Shown here one piece after another: positions 47,784 to 58,691 of a stretch of 64,000 bases of DNA (positions are counted from its first letter, which is position 1; every line of letters begins with the position of its first letter). The translations under genes were made by a program, and so were the position numbers. Under the pieces are notes generated by a model. The model did not search any database. It was not told where the DNA came from and worked only from the letters and a program-made list of their open reading frames with translations. Origin of the DNA: Corallochytrium limacisporum Hawaii (lineage: Eukaryota > Protista > Pluriformea); the NCBI GenBank assembly GCA_002811645.1, contig PDIP01000067.1:180829-244828 (forward strand). The letters run 5' to 3'.

Positions 47784-48380
47784 GGTGTGTCAGAAAGGAG
47801 CCAGACACTATTCATAACGGCTAAAATGGCCACTCCTCATCCTATGCGTAACCTCATTCTTGTGTCCTGGATGTCAATCTGGCCTATAAATCCAAGGCAC
47901 AAGTCTATCATATTCTCACGGATACAAAATCAATGATGATCTCCCAAACCGACAGCCAACTTAACCATCACGTTTTGGAAATACCCTGACCGGGACCATT
48001 GATAGCACCTTATCTAGTTAACTGTGCTCCACGTCGGTCATTCTTCTCTCCCCTCCCCCCATCCCCCGGGGGGGGGCTGCTGGGGGCTGGATTCCTTCCT
48101 TTGCAAGGTTTTCGTTTCCTGTCCGGAAATTAAGACCGGCTCACAATGACTCCAACACGAAGATCTCGTACGACCTGTACTACCCGCTTGGGTTTGAACG
48201 GTCGCGCCGTCGGACGCGCCCCGTATCTGGAGGGGGTGGGCTGGACAAGGGTCCAAAGAAAGAAGGAAAATTAAAGAGTAAAAAACCAAATGGACGAAAA
48301 CAAAAGAGATGCCTAGAGCGGACGGACGGCTCCGCACTGCCAGCCACTCTCGTCCTCGGCCCCCCCCCCCTTTGCCCCCC

Positions 48381-48620
48381 NNNNNNNNNNNNNNNNNNNN
48401 NNNNNNNNNNNNNNNNNNNNNNNNNNNNNNNNNNNNNNNNNNNNNNNNNNNNNNNNNNNNNNNNNNNNNNNNNNNNNNNNNNNNNNNNNNNNNNNNNNNN
48501 NNNNNNNNNNNNNNNNNNNNNNNNNNNNNNNNNNNNNNNNNNNNNNNNNNNNNNNNNNNNNNNNNNNNNNNNNNNNNNNNNNNNNNNNNNNNNNNNNNNN
48601 NNNNNNNNNNNNNNNNNNNN
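48381..48620. other. Assembly gap flanked by C/G runs
   Basis: N run. Confidence 0.99.
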
Positions 48621-49219
48621 CCCGCGGGGGGTCCCCCGTTGCGGCCTATCGTTTTTATGGGGGCCTATTTTTCGCATCCCCAGCAGACTCCCCGCTCTCC
48701 GCTCGACCGAAGCATTCGCCGCGATGACACTGGCTACCCGCGCAAGTACGGGCCTCCACACTTTCCCCTCCCCGTTGGAGCCGTCCCAGAATACCAAAGG
48801 GGCCTTAGTGGCCCGCAGGGCCCTACTGCATATTCTTGCTGCAACCGAGCGCGCACCCCCCGACTGCGCAGAGACCTAAGAAATTTGCGACCAGTGTCGG
48901 TGTACCACAGTAGCGGGAGCCAAATCCGCCATTACCAGGGGTGCGCGCCACCGGTGGGGAGGCGAAGTAGTCGCGTCATTTTGGAAACCGGTTGTCCCAT
49001 TGACAACCATCGCAAACACGGGGCGGGGATTATGGGATAAAGCGATGCAGGGGTTTGTGGCTGATGGGACGAGGTCGAAAAGCGACAGGCACTATACAGA
49101 TTCAATTTTCTTTGTTACGGTATGTGGTATACAGGTATATCGAGGTAAGAATCCATGTAGGTATCGAAGGGAATACTGATTGCTTCATGTATGGATGAGG
49201 AACCACAAACTCTACCACC

Positions 49220-49951
49220 ATGGCGGATTCTGGACTAGAACGCTATGTGCTTAATTCCGTGACCCTCTTCATCGAGGGTTTCAACTGGCTTATCTTTACT
49301 CAGGGATGTACTTACCTGTACTTTATTTTCATGATCACAGATCTTAGACAACTACAGGGCGGTCGGCAGTTCACTCTGAAACATCCTCTGACGTCTTACA
49401 TCACCGCTGTCCTCGTATGCCTCGGCAGCACAGTTGTTACTGGGCTACTGACTGGAACACCAGCAATACCCCTAGACAGTTCAACCAACTACATAGCCAT
49501 CTTCGTAATTTGGTACGTCATTTTCTTTATTCCAAAAGGATTCGCTATCTCACGGTACACACCCCTCTATCAGACTGGTGAGTTCTTTACTCGCATTCGA
49601 CGAGTGGCGCAAATCTGCCGAGGCATTAACATGGCGACTGGCATTATTCCCAAAATTATTGTGGGGACCTTCAAGGCTCAGGGATCCATCTTCATGAGTC
49701 GAATGGTCCTGCACCTCATCAAGCGCAATGACACGGCCAAAGAGGCAAAGTATCATGTGTTTCCAGCCACATTCAAATGGTGCCTTTACGCATCAATGTT
49801 GTTAGTCCTCTGGGAGGAGCAGTTGCTTCCGTTTTCCGCCACCTACGATATTAAGTACTTACGCTTTGGCCTCATCATGTTTATGGCAAACATGCACTAC
49901 GACGCCCTCAATGGCCTCGAAGCTGCTGCCTCGGCAATTTTCCTCCGGTAG
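49220..49951 (+). CDS. TMEM38: Trimeric intracellular cation channel (TRIC)
   Basis: Multi-pass hydrophobic protein; HPLTSYITAVLVCLGS...LLTGTP, WYVIFF.P, RRVAQICRGI, VGTFKAQG, FKWCLYAS. Confidence 0.85.
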   Translation: MADSGLERYVLNSVTLFIEGFNWLIFTQGCTYLYFIFMITDLRQLQGGRQFTLKHPLTSYITAVLVCLGSTVVTGLLTGTPAIPLDSSTNYIAIFVIWYVIFFIPKGFAISRYTPLYQTGEFFTRIRRVAQICRGINMATGIIPKIIVGTFKAQGSIFMSRMVLHLIKRNDTAKEAKYHVFPATFKWCLYASMLLVLWEEQLLPFSATYDIKYLRFGLIMFMANMHYDALNGLEAAASAIFLR

Positions 49952-50408: not shown

Positions 50409-51915
50409 TTTGAATTGTCTGATATGGATGAACCTTGGGACAATATAATATAATCTTGTTCCAAGCGTGCAACGGCTCCTTGAGGGTTCAAGATGAAAAA
50501 GTTTTAAGTACGTAGTCGCAATTGCTATTATTGAGTGCAGACAACAACAAGCAACACGTCCAGCGCATTCACTAGAGGTTCTGTTTTTTTCACGGCACAT
50601 AGGTCCCAGGTTATCCACGCCAACCAGGGGGCGAATTTCCCGTCATTGCCGACATACCGTCCTGGGAACTACACACCTCTACACCGACCCAAGACCCGAC
50701 AAGACCACAGCCATACTCCAATACAGAACGCTCTGACGTTTGTCCCCAGTTTCTTCTCCCACCTTCCCAGCGATGGGCCTGCCACCGCACAAACACACGT
50801 GGATTGCCTGAACCCTCTTGACCACCTTCCTAAGTAAATGTACTATACCTGTGCCCATCCGTATATCATGAATGCAACTAGCCTCGGAAATGGTCCCAAT
50901 TCTTTTTTCAAAAAGGCGATGTAAAGTATATCAAATATAGTTTTTGGATCAGCGTGTTCGAAAACTGCTCACTAGGTGGTATCACTTGACTCCTTGGCTC
51001 AACATGATTCAGCTAGGTTCTCGACCTTAGGATACATTTCTCATGAGATGCAAGATGCCGGTCATCAGGAGTGTCCAAAACCCAGGCGAAGATAATCTTG
51101 TCTCCGGCCATCTGCTTATGGCGTGCCCAAGGGAGTGGAAGGTCTTGAAAGCCACCTTGAGCTGCACGCACGCACCGCGACCCCATTTGCGGCCGAAGTG
51201 ACGTGCTCGGAACTTGGTGGTATTGCCCTGCAGGTTGGGAAGCCGGGGAGAGTAGCGCCTGCAGCTCGGGCTTTCGCCCCCTCCCTTTTGAACCGTGTTC
51301 CTCGCCTTCCCCGACATCGATTTCGCAAGTGAAAGTATGGGGTACGGTGCGCTAGTGAAGTTGCAATTTCTATGCGAAATATTTCCTCTCTCTTTTCTTG
51401 GGGACCCAACCACCCCCCCCCCCCTCCCGAAGGGGGCTGGCGGGATGGGCTCCTCACCTCATCGCCCTTCGAAACTGACTCAGGAGATCCAAAAATGGCG
51501 TGCCGCGCGCTTGCCGATTTTAATTTTCAATTTTCAAAACCCGATATGAAGGGCGTGTCGGCAACGTTTCCTTCGGGAACGCTGGGGAGAGGGACGGCCC
51601 TCCTTTGCAACCACGGGGAATCCGGACGGGCGAGTGCGTCCTGCGACACCGTGAACGCGGGGATGGTCCAGGAGGAGCTGTATAGGTCGTGACATCTATA
51701 TATTTGTCATCAAGGTTGAAAGAATAGCCTATTTCTGTGCAAAGTCCAATTCGTTTGAATGATGCTGACTTGCGAGGGCGAAAGAAAGGGAGAAGGCCAC
51801 AGAAACGCGTGAGATTCCGATGTTTCTGCAGAAGGACGATGTGACACTTGTGCCACACATAGCATGAACATGTGATTAGGACATCTGTGTAGATATCTGA
51901 TGAACTAAATTAGCT

Positions 51916-54900
51916 ATGGCTGATCCAGAGGGAGAATTTAGCTCTCCAGAAAGCCAACCCCTAGTCGCAGGGCAAAGCTGTGGCGATTGTAGGGACAGCA
52001 TATTCAATGCCGCACTGGAGGGACATTTACCATGTCTAAAGTTTATTGTTGAAGACCTTGGTACAGATCCAGATGTACAGGATGAAGATGGTGAGAGTCC
52101 TGTACAGCTTGCTGCCAGTGGTGGTCACTTGGAATGCCTTGAATACTTGGTTCGCGACCGGAACGCTGACGTAGACGTAAAAGACGTGGAGGGATCTACT
52201 CCCTGCCACTGGGCTGCCAGAAACGGATATTTGCATTGCTTACGATTCCTCCATGAGTCAGGTGCAAATTTCAATTTGAGGGATAATGACGGTGATACCC
52301 CAGCAGCACTTGCTGCATTTGATGGGCATTTGAATTGTCTGCAGTTTCTCACATCGGAATTGAAGGTTGACATTGACACACGGAATAGTTATGGTAGCAC
52401 AATGGTTCATGCAGCGGCCCGTAATGGACATATTCGGTGCCTTACGTATTTGATTAACATCTTGCAATGCGACAAGGACGTGGTGAATGAAAACGGAAAG
52501 ACTCCATTGCACTTAGCCTGCGCTGGTGGTCATCTCAGCTGCGTCCGTTTCTTGATAGAAGAATGCGGTGCCAATGTTAAAGCAGAAGACAAAGAAGGTA
52601 ACACACCATTGCATTGGGCTGCACAAGGGGGACATATTAGCAGTGTCCGGTTCCTTATGGAAGAATGTGGCGCAGACTGCAACAAACTAAATGCAGAGAA
52701 GGAGACACCCATTTACTGGGCTGCATCCAACGGGTCGGTAAATTGCCTGCGCTATATGATAAATGAATGCCGAGGCGATGCCAGCATTAAGGAATCTTCA
52801 GGATTGACGCCAGCTCATATCGCTGCTCAAGAGGGTCACGTAGGATGCTTGAGATTTTTATTGGAAGAGGGACACAGTGACCTAGACACGAGGGACCACA
52901 CAGGACAGACTGTAATGCACTATGCGGTTCGATCAGGGGAATTGAAGATAGTCAAATATCTTGTAGAAGATGCCCAGGCAGATGTGCATGTTAAGGACAA
53001 CCAGGGCAACACCTGCATTCATATAGCCGCCACCGAAGATGACTTTGCGATTCTCCGCTATCTGGTGGTTGAATTGGGTGCTGAGACCGGGATTGCAAAC
53101 GATGAGGGAAATCTGCCATTCCAATTGGCAACTGATCCCAAGTGCAAAGCTGTTCTACAAAGCGCCTTGAAGCTGCGCAATGACCACTTGCTTACTCAGC
53201 TATCAAAGGCAGAAGAAGAAATCAACAGTATGAGGCAGCAGCTGAATGACCGGGCGGCATCCGGACTAGATAGAGCTTCTGCGACTGATCAAGCCTCCGG
53301 TGATCGTGCTACCACCATCCTCAAGAGTGACGTGCCTGGTCATTTGTGGGATGTGTTCACACATATCCGGCAAACCTACGCAACCATCGGTGATGCAAGC
53401 AGGACGGCAAGTTTCACCAGAGACAGCATGGATTCTTCCGGTGACATTGAAGAACCCATTCGGAAGAAAGTGAAGCTTACAGACGTGAAAAGTGGCGACG
53501 TTTCCGTAGTCAAACAGGAAATGGATGTAGACGACAAAACGGAAACCAGGGGTCGACGGAAGATTCCTGAAAATCGACCACGCCTTAATTTGGACCAGAT
53601 GTCTGACCATGTCCGGTCACTGCTGGATGTCCGTCGAGGATTCCATTTACCCCCCGATTTGGCGTGGCTTATTGGTCGTACAAGGGAAATCATCAATACC
53701 ATGATATACCAGCCGGGATCTCAGCAGGGCAGTGCACCTGTTGATGATGCTCTTCTGCACAAGGAACAAAGGATCAGCAGACATGCAAACAAGGTTCGGC
53801 ATATTGTGAAACACATCATTCAGGATGAGAATGCCAAGGCCCGAGGGGATAAAGACCTGATCGGTGATAGCAGTAGTGAACAGACGACGGGGTCCGCAAG
53901 CCCTCAGAAGAATGTCAAAGAAGGTGAAAAAGTGAACACGGATGGTGCAGCTGGCGACAACAAGGTTCCCACTCTGACCGAGCTCGAATCCGAGCGTGCC
54001 AAGCGTGACATGGCACGAAATGACTTCTTGGCGTCGTTGCAAGAAGAATACCACAAAACCTCTAGAATCTGTGAGGACATGGAGCGCTTCATCAAAGAGC
54101 TGCCTATGATGCGCAAGCTGTACGGTGAGCTCATGGAAGGTATCGGAACCGAACAGGTGAACATGCCCGAAGAGTTGGCTGTTGTGCGGTCCAAGGATGC
54201 TGGTCGCATTCGTCTGGAAGGTGAAATTCGCACAGTAGAAGAATGGTTGAGTAGTCATGGCAAGGACCTGGAGTCGGCTATGGCCTATACCGATTTTATT
54301 CTGTACATTCTTGAAGACGCCATCACCAAAGAAACTAAGCTTTTGGAAAAGGCCATGACCGCCGCAACACCCATCCGTCGGTTTGCTAGTGTTGCTCGGT
54401 ATTGCCTCCACCAAACGGAATCTCATGCAACGAACAATGCAATGATCACGTGGTGGAAGAGCCGTCAGGCAGAACTGGAAGTTAAGCTGCGGCACGCCAA
54501 CGAGGTCAAGTCTAAGGAAGAATCGTCGCGAGCGCTGCTGAATGAAATGGAAAAGATCAAAGGCAATATTTTGGAATCAAAGGCCAAGGTCTTTGAGCTG
54601 CAGGCGCAAGAAGCACGAGCCACTGCCAGAGGTGCAAGTATGGAGAAGCTGGAGGAAATCAGGTGCATGCGGGAGGAGATGGAAGCCAGCATCAACACGG
54701 ACAATGAGAAGTTACTCGAGTGGCAGACCTTGCGTGCTGACTTGGGACAATCGTTCTTCCCGGAGCTGCAGCTGCAGGATGACACACGGCTGATGAATGT
54801 TGGTGTGCTAGGTACTTCAAGGTCGGGAGGCAATCTCGCAAGCACATCTTCCAACAACGCGCTTCCTCGGGCACTTATTCAGAGTGGTCGCTATATTGAA

Positions 54901-57066
54901 GGTCGTCGCTTTAGCGATTTTGAGGAAGTCTCTTCGTTGGGTCGTCGCGTTCGTCATGTCCGTGCAGCTGGCAAGGACTGGATTCTGAAACGATACGATT
55001 CGACATGTCGGACAGCGCTCATCAAGGAACTCGGTGCTCTTTGTCGCATCAAGCACCCGTCTGTCGTACGCATGCATGCGTTCTTTCGGGATGGACCTGA
55101 CTGGTACGTGCAGATGCCTTTCTTCCCTGGTGGAAATCTAAAGGACCTGCTATCTCGACGCACTGACATGCGGCTGGACGAGAAGCGAAGCATTTTTCAC
55201 CGTTTGGCCTGTGCCCTTGCATATCTGCATGATTCACACATTACTCACGCAGACTTGAAGCTGGAGAATGTGGTTATGGATTCCGAGAGCAAGCCCGTGC
55301 TGGTTGATTTCGACGTCTGCAGCGACCGTGCAAATGCACTCACGGTTACCAAATACCACGGACCCCGTGGTACGCTTGGTTATATGGCCCCCGAAATTGT
55401 CGACGGCAAGTGTCAACCGAACCCAGTGAGTGATGTGTGGGCTTTTGCTGTTATGCTGTATCGTGGAATGGTATCTATTGACGGCGATGTCCTGGTAGAG
55501 GGACAGCATGTCATGTGGAATCGTAATGTGGCTCGCGAGAAGGATCTGAATCTCGAAAACATGCTTGCGCGCATGTTCACGCTGGATCCCGAGCAACGTC
55601 TGAGCATGGCGCATGCCTGTGTGCATCCCTTCTTCAGCGACAGTTCTCTGACTGGTCTGTTGGACGAGAGTCGCATGAAAAAGGATGGCCAGCAGCTGGC
55701 TATTGTGTACCGTCGTTTAGACGAACTCCGCCGAGCCTATATGCAGAGCGTGTGGCGCATTCATGTGAGCCGACCCACTCTAGTACGTGATGTTATGTTG
55801 CACTTTCGGGCCAAGCCAGAGATCATACGCAAGCGCTTGTTGAGCCGCATGAGCGTTGTATACACACACGAAGCCGGTGTAGACGAAGGAGGTCTTAGTA
55901 CGGATCTGATCACTCAATTTTTCCGTCGCATCATTGCCAACAAGAAGCTATTTGAGACTCCAGGCAGCAACCACCTGGCCCTTCCAGCGAAGGCACCCCC
56001 TGCAGTAGTGGCTGCCAAGAAGGCGGCGAAGGAGAACCCAGGGGCTAAGGCGAACCTTGCCGGAAAGGAGGTAAAGAAACTGGAAGAACTGTTGAAGGTC
56101 GAAGCAGAAGCGGAAGAAGCGTACAAAGCCATGGGTGCAGTAATGGCGAAGTGTGTCGTGGATGGTTTGCATATTGAGACACTTTTCGCTCCAACACTGA
56201 CAAAGTTCTTCTTGTCCGCCATCCAGGGCACGGAGGCAAGTGGGAGCATCAGTATGCATGATTTGAAGGCATTTGATCCCGATCTGGCTACGCATTTGAG
56301 TTGGTTGCTGAGCAATCACGTTGATGATCTCGGTCTCACCTTTGACGACCTGGGCGGCATTTACCACGGGCGGGATATTCCGGAGGATACGCTACTAACC
56401 GAGGAGAACAAAGGTGAGTACATCAGCCGTAAATTGTACGACGTGCTACTGAAAGACCGGGAGCATCGTCTCGAGTCCATGGCCAGTGGCTTCTGGACCA
56501 ATATTCAGCACCTTGTCGGCGCTGAAATGGCCTTGCTCAGTCATGCCGAGTTTCGTCTCCTTCTCTTTGGTGCTGGCAGTGTTGCGGCAGCGGATGTCAT
56601 TGCCCTGCTTTGCTCGGAAGGCGATGATCATGGAACCGCCGAACCCTCCGAGAACAACGCTGCCATGGAGCGTTTGAAAAATGTTCTCGAAGGCTGGAGT
56701 CGCAGTAATCCTATCAAACTGCGACATTTCTTGGAGTATGTAACGGGCTCGCCTGCTATGCCGCGAGAGGAAAGTGACCAAATATTCATCCTCTGGATCC
56801 CCGCCAATACCGATGATGAGTTGGCAACTCAGGGTCGACCACAAGAACTCTCTCGCAATCCTTCGATGTCATCGTTTGGCTCTGGTGTGGCTCTGGATGA
56901 GGGCGATGTGCGCAACAACGGCAAAGTAAGTGTGCCCATGCTCCCGATTGCACACACGTGCACCCGCGTCCTGGAAATGGCCCCGTACTCATCTGAAAGG
57001 GAAATGGATGAGGCGTTAAGCAAGGCCTTTGAACTCGGCCTCAACGCAGGCTTCCACATTGCCTAA
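51916..57066 (+). CDS. Ankyrin-repeat / coiled-coil / protein kinase / HECT E3 ubiquitin ligase fusion
   Basis: 11 full ANK repeats plus one partial (~51990-53160); coiled coils; kinase ~54910-55635 (ILK, KE, HADLKLEN, DFD, GT.GYMAPE, DVWAF); HECT ~55750-57063 (EAGVDEGGL, FLEYVTGS, LPIAHTC, terminal GFHIA). Confidence 0.92.
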   Translation: MADPEGEFSSPESQPLVAGQSCGDCRDSIFNAALEGHLPCLKFIVEDLGTDPDVQDEDGESPVQLAASGGHLECLEYLVRDRNADVDVKDVEGSTPCHWAARNGYLHCLRFLHESGANFNLRDNDGDTPAALAAFDGHLNCLQFLTSELKVDIDTRNSYGSTMVHAAARNGHIRCLTYLINILQCDKDVVNENGKTPLHLACAGGHLSCVRFLIEECGANVKAEDKEGNTPLHWAAQGGHISSVRFLMEECGADCNKLNAEKETPIYWAASNGSVNCLRYMINECRGDASIKESSGLTPAHIAAQEGHVGCLRFLLEEGHSDLDTRDHTGQTVMHYAVRSGELKIVKYLVEDAQADVHVKDNQGNTCIHIAATEDDFAILRYLVVELGAETGIANDEGNLPFQLATDPKCKAVLQSALKLRNDHLLTQLSKAEEEINSMRQQLNDRAASGLDRASATDQASGDRATTILKSDVPGHLWDVFTHIRQTYATIGDASRTASFTRDSMDSSGDIEEPIRKKVKLTDVKSGDVSVVKQEMDVDDKTETRGRRKIPENRPRLNLDQMSDHVRSLLDVRRGFHLPPDLAWLIGRTREIINTMIYQPGSQQGSAPVDDALLHKEQRISRHANKVRHIVKHIIQDENAKARGDKDLIGDSSSEQTTGSASPQKNVKEGEKVNTDGAAGDNKVPTLTELESERAKRDMARNDFLASLQEEYHKTSRICEDMERFIKELPMMRKLYGELMEGIGTEQVNMPEELAVVRSKDAGRIRLEGEIRTVEEWLSSHGKDLESAMAYTDFILYILEDAITKETKLLEKAMTAATPIRRFASVARYCLHQTESHATNNAMITWWKSRQAELEVKLRHANEVKSKEESSRALLNEMEKIKGNILESKAKVFELQAQEARATARGASMEKLEEIRCMREEMEASINTDNEKLLEWQTLRADLGQSFFPELQLQDDTRLMNVGVLGTSRSGGNLASTSSNNALPRALIQSGRYIEGRRFSDFEEVSSLGRRVRHVRAAGKDWILKRYDSTCRTALIKELGALCRIKHPSVVRMHAFFRDGPDWYVQMPFFPGGNLKDLLSRRTDMRLDEKRSIFHRLACALAYLHDSHITHADLKLENVVMDSESKPVLVDFDVCSDRANALTVTKYHGPRGTLGYMAPEIVDGKCQPNPVSDVWAFAVMLYRGMVSIDGDVLVEGQHVMWNRNVAREKDLNLENMLARMFTLDPEQRLSMAHACVHPFFSDSSLTGLLDESRMKKDGQQLAIVYRRLDELRRAYMQSVWRIHVSRPTLVRDVMLHFRAKPEIIRKRLLSRMSVVYTHEAGVDEGGLSTDLITQFFRRIIANKKLFETPGSNHLALPAKAPPAVVAAKKAAKENPGAKANLAGKEVKKLEELLKVEAEAEEAYKAMGAVMAKCVVDGLHIETLFAPTLTKFFLSAIQGTEASGSISMHDLKAFDPDLATHLSWLLSNHVDDLGLTFDDLGGIYHGRDIPEDTLLTEENKGEYISRKLYDVLLKDREHRLESMASGFWTNIQHLVGAEMALLSHAEFRLLLFGAGSVAAADVIALLCSEGDDHGTAEPSENNAAMERLKNVLEGWSRSNPIKLRHFLEYVTGSPAMPREESDQIFILWIPANTDDELATQGRPQELSRNPSMSSFGSGVALDEGDVRNNGKVSVPMLPIAHTCTRVLEMAPYSSEREMDEALSKAFELGLNAGFHIA

Positions 57067-57146
57067 CTGTGTACTACACAGCCTGTTAAAATAGAACTAC
57101 TACAAACTTTACATATGAACTTGACGTACATGTATCATGACTAGAG

Positions 57147-58691
57147 TTACAGAACATCGATACCGATGCCAAGGTGCCATCCAGTACGGAATTGATCTGA
57201 TGGAAGCACTTGGACCGGCATGCAATAGCTCAGCTCCACGCGCGCTATCGCAGTCCTCAGTACCAAGCCAGCTCCCATGCTCGCTCGCACATTGTCACCA
57301 GACATTTCCATTAACATAGTGCGCATTCTATGCCCTGCACTCAAGCCGCCTGCAGTTACAAATCCGTGAGTAAAGATACTATCCCCGAGTCCGGTGCTGC
57401 CCAGACCCGGAATCTTCGTGTAAACGTGCATTCCAGTGCTCCACATAGCATTGCCTCCAAGAGAGTACCCTTCCGAAGTGCCGGGGTTCACACCGCGCAT
57501 CGCAAAACCGCGTAGGGAGTCCGGACCGCCGAGGTAGAAGCGGTCACACAGGTGCGATGAAGAAATTGGAGCCAAGGGCGCGTCCGTGCCGGCCACATCA
57601 CTCGAACCAGCGTCACCACCTATTGATGTAGCCGAGAACGTCGGACCTAGGGAGCTGGTGGATCCGCTGCTGGTGGCCCTAGTGCCACCACTGCTGCCTG
57701 ATGTCATGGCTGTGGTCTGGAAATTCGCATTCACAGCACTCAGACCACTCAGAAATCCCGTCTTGAAGTGCAGACTCACCGTCAAGCCAAGTCGACGGAT
57801 TGAACGGATGACCTCAAGGTCTAGTGTTGTCTTCAAGAACCGCACATTGCCTCCCAGGACCCCAGCTAATTCATTGGAGAGGATGAATTTTGTACCCGTT
57901 GACGCTAAAATCGGATGGTCCCTACTGTCTGCTGTCATAGTGTGAGTGATGCTGGTCTTGAATGAATGTCCCGCCTCGTCGTGCACACGAACAGATGCAG
58001 CCGGTGGGATGTTGCCAATTTCACGCCAGGAGTCCTCAACCGAAAGACGGTGCTGTCCGTAGAGAGTGGCAAAGAGATAACTAAACTCTCCACCACGAAT
58101 AATCTCATCATGTCCAGATAGCTGTTGAAGATCCCGGAACGTCTGCCATCCCTTGATCTGCCACCGGTACCGCGGATCACCACTCATAGACGTGGGCCGG
58201 GAGAACGTTGCTGTCATTGCCCGTTTCGTTTGTGTTCCGACGGAATAGTCGAAGCTCGCCTGCTCACCTCTACCAAAAACGTTGCGAAACTTTGCACTTA
58301 CATTAGCACTGGTATCGCTGGAACCGATCTCTGTTCCTGTTTTGGCCTGCAGAAGCCCGCATTCCTCAACGATATAGGTAACTTCAAGCGGTTCTGGCCC
58401 CGCTATTCCTTTCTTATTCTCGCTGACCTCAGCCTTTCTAATCTGGACTCCGACGCCTTTGAATGCTTCAAGATTCTGTAATTTGCGTGACGTGTAACGT
58501 ATTTCAAACAGGAGCTCACTGACAGTGCGGGCCTCCAACAGTCGCGCCACATCGTCGTAAACGACGTCGTTCTTGGTCCGATTGAAGCCGATAAAGTTAA
58601 CTTTGGTTACATTGATGGAGTTTCCCGTGTCCCAATCGTCTGTATGTACAAATGAAGGCCCCGCAGGAGCCGACTCGTCCTCGGAGGCCAT
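57147..58691 (-). CDS. SAMM50: Sorting and assembly machinery component 50 (Omp85 family)
   Basis: POTRA-like N-terminus (GFNRTKND), RNVFGRGE, DSRDHPIL, DRFYLGGPDSLRGF, RVELSYCMP, terminal GIGIDVL. Confidence 0.94.
   Translation of the reverse strand: MASEDESAPAGPSFVHTDDWDTGNSINVTKVNFIGFNRTKNDVVYDDVARLLEARTVSELLFEIRYTSRKLQNLEAFKGVGVQIRKAEVSENKKGIAGPEPLEVTYIVEECGLLQAKTGTEIGSSDTSANVSAKFRNVFGRGEQASFDYSVGTQTKRAMTATFSRPTSMSGDPRYRWQIKGWQTFRDLQQLSGHDEIIRGGEFSYLFATLYGQHRLSVEDSWREIGNIPPAASVRVHDEAGHSFKTSITHTMTADSRDHPILASTGTKFILSNELAGVLGGNVRFLKTTLDLEVIRSIRRLGLTVSLHFKTGFLSGLSAVNANFQTTAMTSGSSGGTRATSSGSTSSLGPTFSATSIGGDAGSSDVAGTDAPLAPISSSHLCDRFYLGGPDSLRGFAMRGVNPGTSEGYSLGGNAMWSTGMHVYTKIPGLGSTGLGDSIFTHGFVTAGGLSAGHRMRTMLMEMSGDNVRASMGAGLVLRTAIARVELSYCMPVQVLPSDQFRTGWHLGIGIDVL

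What the first reader, a model, noticed from the sequence alone, without database searches (positions are those of the whole stretch)
51916..57066. Single-chain ankyrin - non-RD kinase - HECT ligase: sensor, phosphorylation and ubiquitination in one protein
Seen: one uninterrupted 1716-aa ORF with ~12 ANK repeats, a ~570-aa coiled-coil region containing an NLS-like PIRKKVK, a kinase domain and a HECT domain retaining its catalytic Cys (AHTC, 56959-56961) and the -4 Phe. Known: ANK+HECT is the HACE1 architecture; human and yeast HECT ligases do not carry a kinase domain. Inference: a self-contained switch in which ANK binds a target, the coiled coil oligomerises, and the kinase gates or primes the E3; possibly a cell-autonomous defence or quality-control module.
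Basis: partly seen in the sequence, partly recalled or inferred. Interest (0 to 1): 0.8.

Follow-up and report, generated by a model that had tools for sequence, protein, structure and literature searches.

The report
Ankyrin–kinase–HECT ubiquitin ligase, known family
The gene is real and is expressed as one message, but it belongs to an already described and widespread family of ubiquitin ligases with a built-in regulatory kinase (characterised in Leishmania as TKUL), so it is a new member, not a new kind of protein.

Summary
Window 51916-57066 (+) is one intronless 1716-aa gene. It encodes 12 ankyrin repeats, a helix-rich and partly disordered middle region, a protein kinase, and a C-terminal HECT domain with Cys1682 (nt 56959-56961) and Phe at -4. 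Transcript-like contigs from two isolates span the whole gene without gaps, so a misassembled fusion is ruled out.

The architecture is not new. 45 of the 150 best cluster representatives carry kinase followed by HECT. Named members come from Leishmania, Naegleria, dictyostelids and other amoebae, a malawimonad, a metamonad, a glaucophyte, a green alga and a chrysophyte. A 2013 HECT survey noted kinase-HECT proteins. The Leishmania member (TKUL/HECT12) is cited as a ligase switched on by its own kinase. The "odd" motifs (no Gly-rich loop, HAD, DFD) are family traits. The HECT domain groups with other kinase-HECT proteins, not with HACE1-like ones.

New here: apparently a member in an animal relative (probably Corallochytrium), and four paralogs in that genome, of which only this one keeps all catalytic residues.

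The scan noted this stretch twice (s1-584434, s1-558438) and one paralog on other DNA (s1-578696).

The parts
51763..57086 (+). Footprint of the transcript-like contigs, taken as one mRNA of about 5.3 kb
   Evidence: run X4 has one 5322-nt contig covering 51763-57083 with no gaps. Run X3 has three overlapping contigs tiling 51763-57086. The flanks 51450-51762 and 57087-57344 are uncovered in both, although the DNA run X1 covers them. Contigs cannot prove the exact ends.
51763..51915 (+). 5' leader holding five upstream ATGs that open short uORFs
   Evidence: ATGs at 51820, 51839, 51864, 51870 and 51900; the in-frame one at 51820 ends at a stop after 15 codons.
51916..57066 (+). Coding sequence, 1716 aa plus stop, with no intron
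   Evidence: no joints and no indels in the transcript contigs.
52000..53190 (+). Ankyrin-repeat domain, 12 units including caps (about residues 29-425); presumed binding module
   Evidence: Ank_2 1.8e-77, Ank 4e-69; repeat count read.
53191..54867 (+). Middle region (residues 426-984): long helices alternating with disordered stretches; it has no paralog in the genome
53455..53475 (+). PIRKKVK, a basic motif that matches a monopartite nuclear-localisation consensus (unverified)
   Evidence: motif match only.
54922..55638 (+). Protein kinase domain (about residues 1003-1241). It keeps K1025, E1038, H-A-D1113, N1118, D1131-F-D and APE, and has no Gly-rich loop.
   Evidence: AlphaFold pLDDT is mostly above 90.
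55639..55815 (+). Kinase-HECT linker (residues 1242-1300): a short low-confidence stretch, then a conserved helix and strand leading into the HECT N-lobe
   Evidence: low pLDDT at residues 1243-1257; helix at model positions 275-295.
55816..57063 (+). HECT domain (about residues 1301-1716), N-lobe and C-lobe
   Evidence: model pLDDT 85; best fold match is the HUWE1 HECT-ubiquitin conjugate 6xz1_A, E 3.4e-19, TM 0.74 by target.
55978..56100 (+). Lineage-specific Ala/Lys/Glu-rich insert in the HECT N-lobe (about residues 1355-1395)
   Evidence: Alignment A2.
56818..56928 (+). Lineage-specific disordered insert in the C-lobe (residues 1635-1671), just before the catalytic loop
   Evidence: (gap in the nearest relative P0182), and (pLDDT below 50).
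56959..56961 (+). Catalytic cysteine Cys1682 (TGC) in LPIAHTC
   Evidence: The Cys is conserved in 36 of 37 aligned family members.

Best explanation
This is a genuine, expressed, intronless gene for a member of the kinase-HECT family of E3 ubiquitin ligases. The characterised member of that family is Leishmania TKUL/HECT12.

Proposed working:
1. The N-terminal ankyrin domain recruits the target or a partner (inferred).
2. The kinase domain, which keeps every catalytic residue, autophosphorylates or adopts an active, nucleotide-bound conformation, and through the conserved linker switches the adjoining HECT domain on. This is inferred by homology to TKUL.
3. The HECT domain takes ubiquitin from an E2 onto Cys1682 and passes it to the bound target or to itself. 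This is the standard HECT mechanism, and the residues are present.

Family membership is shown (about 0.9). The kinase-gated mechanism is inferred (about 0.5-0.6).
For: - One gene, one message: transcript-like contigs from two isolates span 51763-57086 without gaps. Of the 14 coding differences between isolates, 8 are synonymous and 6 are not. The differences in the ankyrin (3) and kinase (1) domains are synonymous. One non-synonymous difference (A1575T) lies in the HECT domain; the other five lie between domains.
- Domains.
- Family: 45 of the 150 best 50%-identity cluster representatives carry kinase then HECT. Pfam confirms HECT in 42 of 42 and Pkinase in 40 of 42.
- Homology runs through the kinase, the linker and the HECT domain (alignment A2).
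- The best solved-structure match of the kinase is 9gmp_A, the kinase domain of Leishmania mexicana HECT12 (6e-23; identity of the entry).
- HECT tree: the genome's 13 other HECT domains form one side of a branch (SH-aLRT 99) and all kinase-HECT proteins lie on the other side.
- Kinase tree: the HECT label needs only 3 changes, against a shuffled mean of 33.
- Catalytic K, E, D, N, D and APE and the HECT Cys and -4 Phe are all present; HAD and DFD are common family states.
- The kinase-HECT part gives a confident AlphaFold model (pLDDT 85.1) with a HECT fold.
- Mechanism in the homologue: which cite Fokkens et al. 2025, Mol Cell 85:3711.
Against: - There is no biochemistry for this protein.
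- I could not read the primary TKUL paper, so the switch residues could not be mapped.
- Identity to TKUL is only about 28%.
- The Gly-rich ATP loop is absent, as it is across the family.
- The nearest relative (P0182) and all three paralogs in the same genome have degenerate kinases. Catalysis by the kinase is therefore dispensable in close kin.
- A 37-residue disordered insert sits right before the catalytic loop.
- The runs taken as RNA are only guessed to be RNA, and contigs cannot fix transcript ends.
Confidence: 0.65

Rival explanations
1. The kinase domain is a non-catalytic regulatory or scaffolding module. It may bind nucleotide but does not phosphorylate, and the ligase is controlled by conformation or by partners alone.
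For: - The domain has no Gly-rich loop.
- The nearest relative P0182 lacks the HxD and DFG motifs.
- Paralogs C247, C285 and C110 all have dead kinases, yet the kinase fold is kept.
- The TKUL switch is described as allosteric.
Against: - This copy retains K1025, E1038, D1113, N1118, D1131 and APE. About 30-33 of 37 family members do the same.
- TKUL has the same loop-less N-lobe and is reported to autophosphorylate.
- The single difference between isolates inside the kinase domain is synonymous.
Confidence: 0.2
2. Substrate-priming relay: the kinase phosphorylates the target bound by the ankyrin domain, creating a mark that the HECT domain of the same chain then ubiquitinates. In this reading the kinase does not control the ligase itself.
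For: - Both active sites are intact.
- The variable N-terminal repeat modules across the family (TPR, ANK, LRR, Kelch, filamin, FYVE) look like substrate-recruiting modules shared by both enzymes.
Against: - The only characterised member is described as regulated by autophosphorylation and an allosteric kinase switch.
- No substrate is known.
- Paralogs keep a live HECT with a dead kinase, so the ligase does not need priming in cis.
Confidence: 0.12
3. Artefact: two neighbouring genes (ANK-kinase and HECT) joined by misassembly or by a read-through ORF.
For: The DNA run's contigs break at 54357-54390, inside the gene.
Against: - The two DNA contigs overlap there with no mismatch.
- A single 5322-nt contig from another isolate spans the entire ORF.
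- Homology to other kinase-HECT proteins runs continuously across the junction.
- Three paralogs in the same genome share the layout.
Confidence: 0.01
4. A recent, lineage-specific invention: a HACE1-type ANK-HECT ligase that captured a kinase domain.
For: ANK plus HECT is the HACE1 layout, and the genome holds a HACE1-like ANK-HECT gene (C110, L020).
Against: - The HECT domain lies with those of other eukaryotes' kinase-HECT proteins.
- The AU test rejects a clade with the HACE1-like gene (p 0.012, lnL difference 41).
- HACE1 is a weaker PDB match than NEDD4 or HUWE1.
- ANK-kinase-HECT also occurs in other members that are not its sisters (P0130, P0138).
Confidence: 0.02

Closest known systems
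Leishmania mexicana TKUL (HECT12, LmxM.34.4000; L. major LmjF.35.4000); its kinase domain is solved as PDB 9gmp
   Same: - The kinase sits directly before a C-terminal HECT domain, with homology through the kinase, the linker and the HECT domain.
- Its kinase is the best solved-structure match of this kinase.
- Both lack the Gly-rich loop and are non-RD (HGD there, HAD here).
- Both keep the HECT Cys and a GFH-type tail.
   Different: - Identity is only about 28%.
- TKUL has DFG, this protein DFD.
- My scan of the TKUL cluster did not report ankyrin repeats for it.
- This protein has 12 ankyrin repeats, a 560-residue helical and disordered spacer, and two HECT inserts.
- The organism is a free-living marine protist, so there is no virulence context.
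Kinase-bearing HECT proteins of Naegleria gruberi and Ectocarpus siliculosus (the 'GL-Bikonta' family of Grau-Bove et al. 2013, PMC3673628)
   Same: [quoted passage not shown] Naegleria, Willaertia and Pharyngomonas members are among the hits here.
   Different: That survey named only bikont taxa for the family. I did not test the proposed kinship with G2E3.
P0182, an unnamed 1117-aa protein from ENA metagenome assemblies (nearest relative found)
   Same: It is sister in the HECT tree (SH-aLRT 98), and each is the other's best match in the window's genome. The tail around the catalytic Cys is very similar.
   Different: - It has no ankyrin repeats.
- Its kinase is degenerate, with no HxD or DFG.
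- It lacks the C-lobe insert.
- Its source organism is unknown and is not a close relative of the window's.
HACE1 (animal ANK-HECT ligase)
   Same: Ankyrin repeats at the N-terminus and a HECT domain at the C-terminus.
   Different: - HACE1 has no kinase.
- This HECT domain is not HACE1-like.
- The genome has a separate gene whose HECT domain best matches HACE1.

Membership tests
Kinase-HECT (TKUL-type) E3 ligases | A protein kinase domain directly N-terminal to a C-terminal HECT domain in one polypeptide | tested here: met
   Pfam finds Pkinase at 1011-1240 and HECT at 1391-1715. The transcript contig is continuous.
Kinase-HECT (TKUL-type) E3 ligases | The HECT domain groups with those of other kinase-HECT proteins, apart from other HECT classes | tested here: met
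   In the quick IQ-TREE tree of 51 rows, the genome's 13 other HECT domains form one side of a branch with SH-aLRT 99. The tree is unrooted and its backbone is weak.
Kinase-HECT (TKUL-type) E3 ligases | The kinase domain is related to the family's kinases | tested here: met
   The best PDB match is 9gmp_A, the TKUL kinase (6e-23). In the FastTree kinase tree the HECT label needs 3 changes, against a shuffled mean of 33.
Kinase-HECT (TKUL-type) E3 ligases | A conserved linker between the kinase and HECT domains | tested here: met
   Alignment A2 aligns from the HPxF end of the kinase through a Lys/Arg-bearing helix to the GExGxDxGGL motif.
Kinase-HECT (TKUL-type) E3 ligases | Catalytic residues of both enzymes are present | tested here: met
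   K1025, E1038, D1113, N1118, D1131, APE, Cys1682 and Phe1713 are all present. The Gly-rich loop is absent, as it is across the family.
Kinase-HECT (TKUL-type) E3 ligases | Ligase activity depends on the kinase or on autophosphorylation | not testable with these tools
   Known only for Leishmania TKUL, through citations. The primary paper is not held.
HACE1 | The HECT domain is orthologous to that of HACE1 | tested here: not met
   HACE1 is a weak match (1.5e-3) behind NEDD4 and HUWE1. The domain is separate from the genome's HACE1-like gene in the tree. The AU test gives p 0.012.
HACE1 | Ankyrin repeats followed by HECT with no other catalytic domain | tested here: not met
   A kinase domain and a spacer of about 560 residues lie between the two.
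G2E3-like HECT class IV ('GL-Bikonta', Grau-Bove 2013) | The HECT domain falls in the G2E3-like clade | not tested
The link is from the literature only.
Pseudokinases | Loss of one or more of the beta3 Lys, the catalytic Asp or the DFG Asp | tested here: not met
   All three are present here. Paralogs C247, C285 and C110 and relative P0182 do meet this criterion.

The most novel reading that the evidence does not exclude
The kinase-HECT family dates back to early eukaryotes and was lost in animals and fungi. This animal relative would then be a rare or the only opisthokont keeping it. Its four paralogs form a natural decay series: live kinase with live HECT; dead kinase with live HECT; and two copies with both dead. 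In that series the dead copies would act as regulators or decoys of the live enzyme. That would offer a tractable free-living model for how a kinase switch controls a HECT ligase.
Probability: 0.2. Interest if true: 0.5.

Novelty: new member of a known kind. Interest (0 to 1): 0.3.

Why it matters
The protein shows that the kinase-switched HECT ligase recently dissected in Leishmania belongs to a broad eukaryotic family with interchangeable N-terminal binding modules. The family apparently reaches into the unicellular relatives of animals.

For the scan, the main value is negative. The architecture that looked unprecedented from a human and yeast viewpoint is already described.

There is a modest positive value. 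This genome offers four paralogs with different combinations of live and dead active sites, in an intron-free organism. They could serve as comparative material for the allosteric switch.

Tried and rejected
1. Word-indexed homology searches gave little.
   - Region 1000-1716 found only one two-domain relative, P0002.
   - Region 1236-1716 found only P0132.
   - The family alignment A2 as query was swamped by plain kinases and returned no HECT-bearing hit.
   - The range of the family within opisthokonts therefore stays unresolved.
2. Fold search in the ESM Atlas returned generic HECT and kinase clusters. It was no help on taxonomy.
3. The primary TKUL paper is not held. A full-text search for a preprint found only citing papers.
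4. Searching the genome with the protein's kinase-HECT part or HECT part did not find the fourth, fully degenerate paralog. The family profile missed it as well. The ankyrin part did find it.
5. The middle region has no paralog in the genome.
6. The neighbour genes of the nearest relative P0182 are not close to anything in this genome, so its organism could not be placed.
7. The misassembly and HACE1-origin readings were considered and rejected.
8. I found no evidence bearing on a defence role.

Full report
**Observation**

The window holds an uninterrupted ORF at 51916-57066 (+), 1716 aa. In-frame stop codons lie just upstream of its ATG.

Pfam finds strong ankyrin matches, a protein kinase domain (residues 1011-1240, 2.4e-34) and a HECT domain (1391-1715, 5.6e-30). 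Reading the repeats gives 12 ankyrin units including the caps.

The catalytic cysteine is Cys1682, codon TGC at 56959-56961. Phe1713 sits at -4 from the C-terminus. The kinase has HAD and DFD and no glycine-rich loop. It keeps the beta3 Lys (K1025), the alphaC Glu, the catalytic Asp and Asn, the metal-binding Asp and APE.

The "570-aa coiled coil" is only partly borne out. A single-sequence AlphaFold model of residues 415-1000 has low confidence (pLDDT 48.5). It shows long helices, confident only around residues 854-944, broken by unstructured stretches that are richer in Pro, Gly, Ser and Thr. PIRKKVK (514-520) is a motif match only.

**Is it one gene?**

The neighbouring genes are eukaryotic and intronless: DNA polymerase alpha, ORC5, PRORP, TRIC, an Omp85/Sam50-type protein and RPAP3.

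Public runs hold the stretch. Laid on 51450-57400, run X4 gives a single 5322-nt contig covering 51763-57083 without gaps. Run X3 gives three overlapping contigs covering 51763-57086. Both leave the intergenic flanks uncovered, while the DNA run covers them. That is the behaviour of transcript assemblies, although these runs are only guessed to be RNA and contigs cannot fix ends.

X4 differs at 16 positions: 2 in the leader, 8 synonymous and 6 non-synonymous. The differences inside the ankyrin and kinase domains are synonymous. One non-synonymous change (A1575T) lies in the HECT domain and the other five lie between domains. A misassembled fusion is therefore excluded as far as these data go.

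**Organism**

Earlier notes of this scan name Corallochytrium limacisporum. The assembly has 24,109,830 bases, and long genes here lack introns. The published genome is 24.1 Mb with 0.0 introns per kb of CDS, and its RNA-seq came from a 2015 study (PMC5560861). This agrees with the notes but is not proof.

**What it is**

An exhaustive HMMER search with residues 980-1716 found 72 cluster representatives below 1e-30. My domain tally shows that 45 of the best 150 carry a kinase followed by a HECT domain. Pfam confirms HECT in 42 of 42 and Pkinase in 40 of 42.

The N-terminal modules differ from member to member: TPR, ankyrin, LRR, Kelch, filamin and FYVE/TIG.

Named members come from:
- Leishmania, Naegleria, Tieghemostelium, Soliformovum and Gloeochaete;
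- Pharyngomonas, Willaertia, Paraphysomonas and Cymbomonas;
- Echinamoeba, Gefionella and Anaeramoeba.

An ESM Atlas cluster of 71 Pkinase+HECT proteins is mostly streptophyte.

Homology runs continuously through the kinase, a conserved linker and the HECT domain (alignment A2). The best solved-structure match of the kinase is 9gmp_A, which is the kinase domain of the Leishmania mexicana member.

In a HECT-domain tree, the genome's 13 other HECT domains form one side of a branch (SH-aLRT 99) and every kinase-HECT protein lies on the other side. The window protein is sister to the metagenomic protein P0182 (SH-aLRT 98). In a kinase tree the "has HECT" label needs 3 changes against 33 for shuffled labels, so a single origin of the fusion is not excluded.

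The residue between His and Asp is Arg in only 13 of 37 members. DFD and DFG are equally common, at 16 each.

AlphaFold with the family alignment gives a confident model of the kinase-HECT part (pLDDT 85.1, pTM 0.61). Only the start of the linker and a 37-residue C-lobe insert are disordered. The HECT part matches solved HECT domains, best the HUWE1-ubiquitin conjugate.

**What is known**

The Leishmania member was knocked out as HECT12 and showed fitness defects (PMC7647121). It is now called TKUL. [quoted passage not shown] 2025. A 2026 preprint states that both activities matter in amastigotes and that autophosphorylation is required for ligase activity. I could not read the primary paper.

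**How it most likely works**

- Shown: family membership, intact catalytic residues of both enzymes, one message.
- Inferred by homology: the kinase domain acts as a switch on the adjoining HECT domain.
- Inferred from the variable N-terminal modules: the ankyrin domain recruits the target.

Rivals are a non-catalytic kinase module and a substrate-priming relay. The first is suggested because P0182 and all paralogs have dead kinases.

The HACE1 comparison fails. HACE1 is a weaker match than NEDD4 or HUWE1. The genome has its own HACE1-like ANK-HECT gene. An AU test rejects joining the two (p 0.012), with the caveat that I named the group after seeing the tree.

**Paralogs**

The genome holds four family members:
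- the window gene;
- C247 (1508 aa), with a dead kinase and the HECT Cys kept;
- C285 (1503 aa), with LRR repeats, a dead kinase, the HECT Cys replaced by Ala, and a C-terminal extension;
- C110:75084-80849 (1921 aa), with ankyrin repeats, a dead kinase and a HECT-like domain without the Cys.

Only the window gene keeps every catalytic residue.

**Verdict**

It is a new member of a known kind.

The possibly new points are its presence in an animal relative and the four-paralog decay series. None of the roughly two dozen named members is an opisthokont, but my searches could not settle the family's range.

Noticed in passing
G000:C247 (L017:5369-9892, minus strand): A paralog of 1508 aa with no recognised N-terminal domain. 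Its kinase has lost the beta3 Lys, the catalytic Asp and the DFG Asp. Its HECT domain keeps the catalytic Cys.
   Followed up: partly
G000:C285 (L018:4381-8889, minus strand): A paralog of 1503 aa with LRR repeats and a dead kinase. The HECT catalytic Cys is replaced by Ala, and the protein has a C-terminal extension of about 100 residues.
   Followed up: partly
G000:C110:75084-80849 (L039:2085-7850, plus strand): A fourth paralog of 1921 aa. It has ankyrin repeats and a kinase-like domain reading HGS, with no DFG. A HECT-like domain, recognisable only by profile comparison (99.6%), lacks the catalytic Cys.
   Followed up: yes
window 51763-51915: The 153-nt leader covered by the transcript contigs holds five upstream ATGs opening very short uORFs, one of them in frame with the main ORF. 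This could mean translational control, or the contigs may reach beyond the true start of the message.
   Followed up: partly
window 57067-57146: The gene converges on the Omp85/Sam50-type gene (57147-58691, minus strand), with only 80 bases between the two stop codons. The transcript contigs end about 17-20 bases after the stop.
   Followed up: no
G000:C110:31034-32212 (L020:4032-8726, minus strand): A separate ANK-HECT gene of 1565 aa without a kinase. Its HECT domain best matches HACE1 among solved HECT structures. Its ankyrin repeats lie mid-protein (residues 822-950), not at the N-terminus.
   Followed up: partly
ESM Atlas fold search, row 9: A cluster of 73 proteins in which about half the members combine a protein kinase with a UCH deubiquitinase domain. 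It is another kinase fused to a ubiquitin-system enzyme.
   Followed up: no
window 48309-49040 and 49220-49951: Two adjacent 243-aa ORFs of equal length. The second is a TRIC-channel protein by Pfam; the first had no Pfam match. They may be a tandem pair.
   Followed up: no
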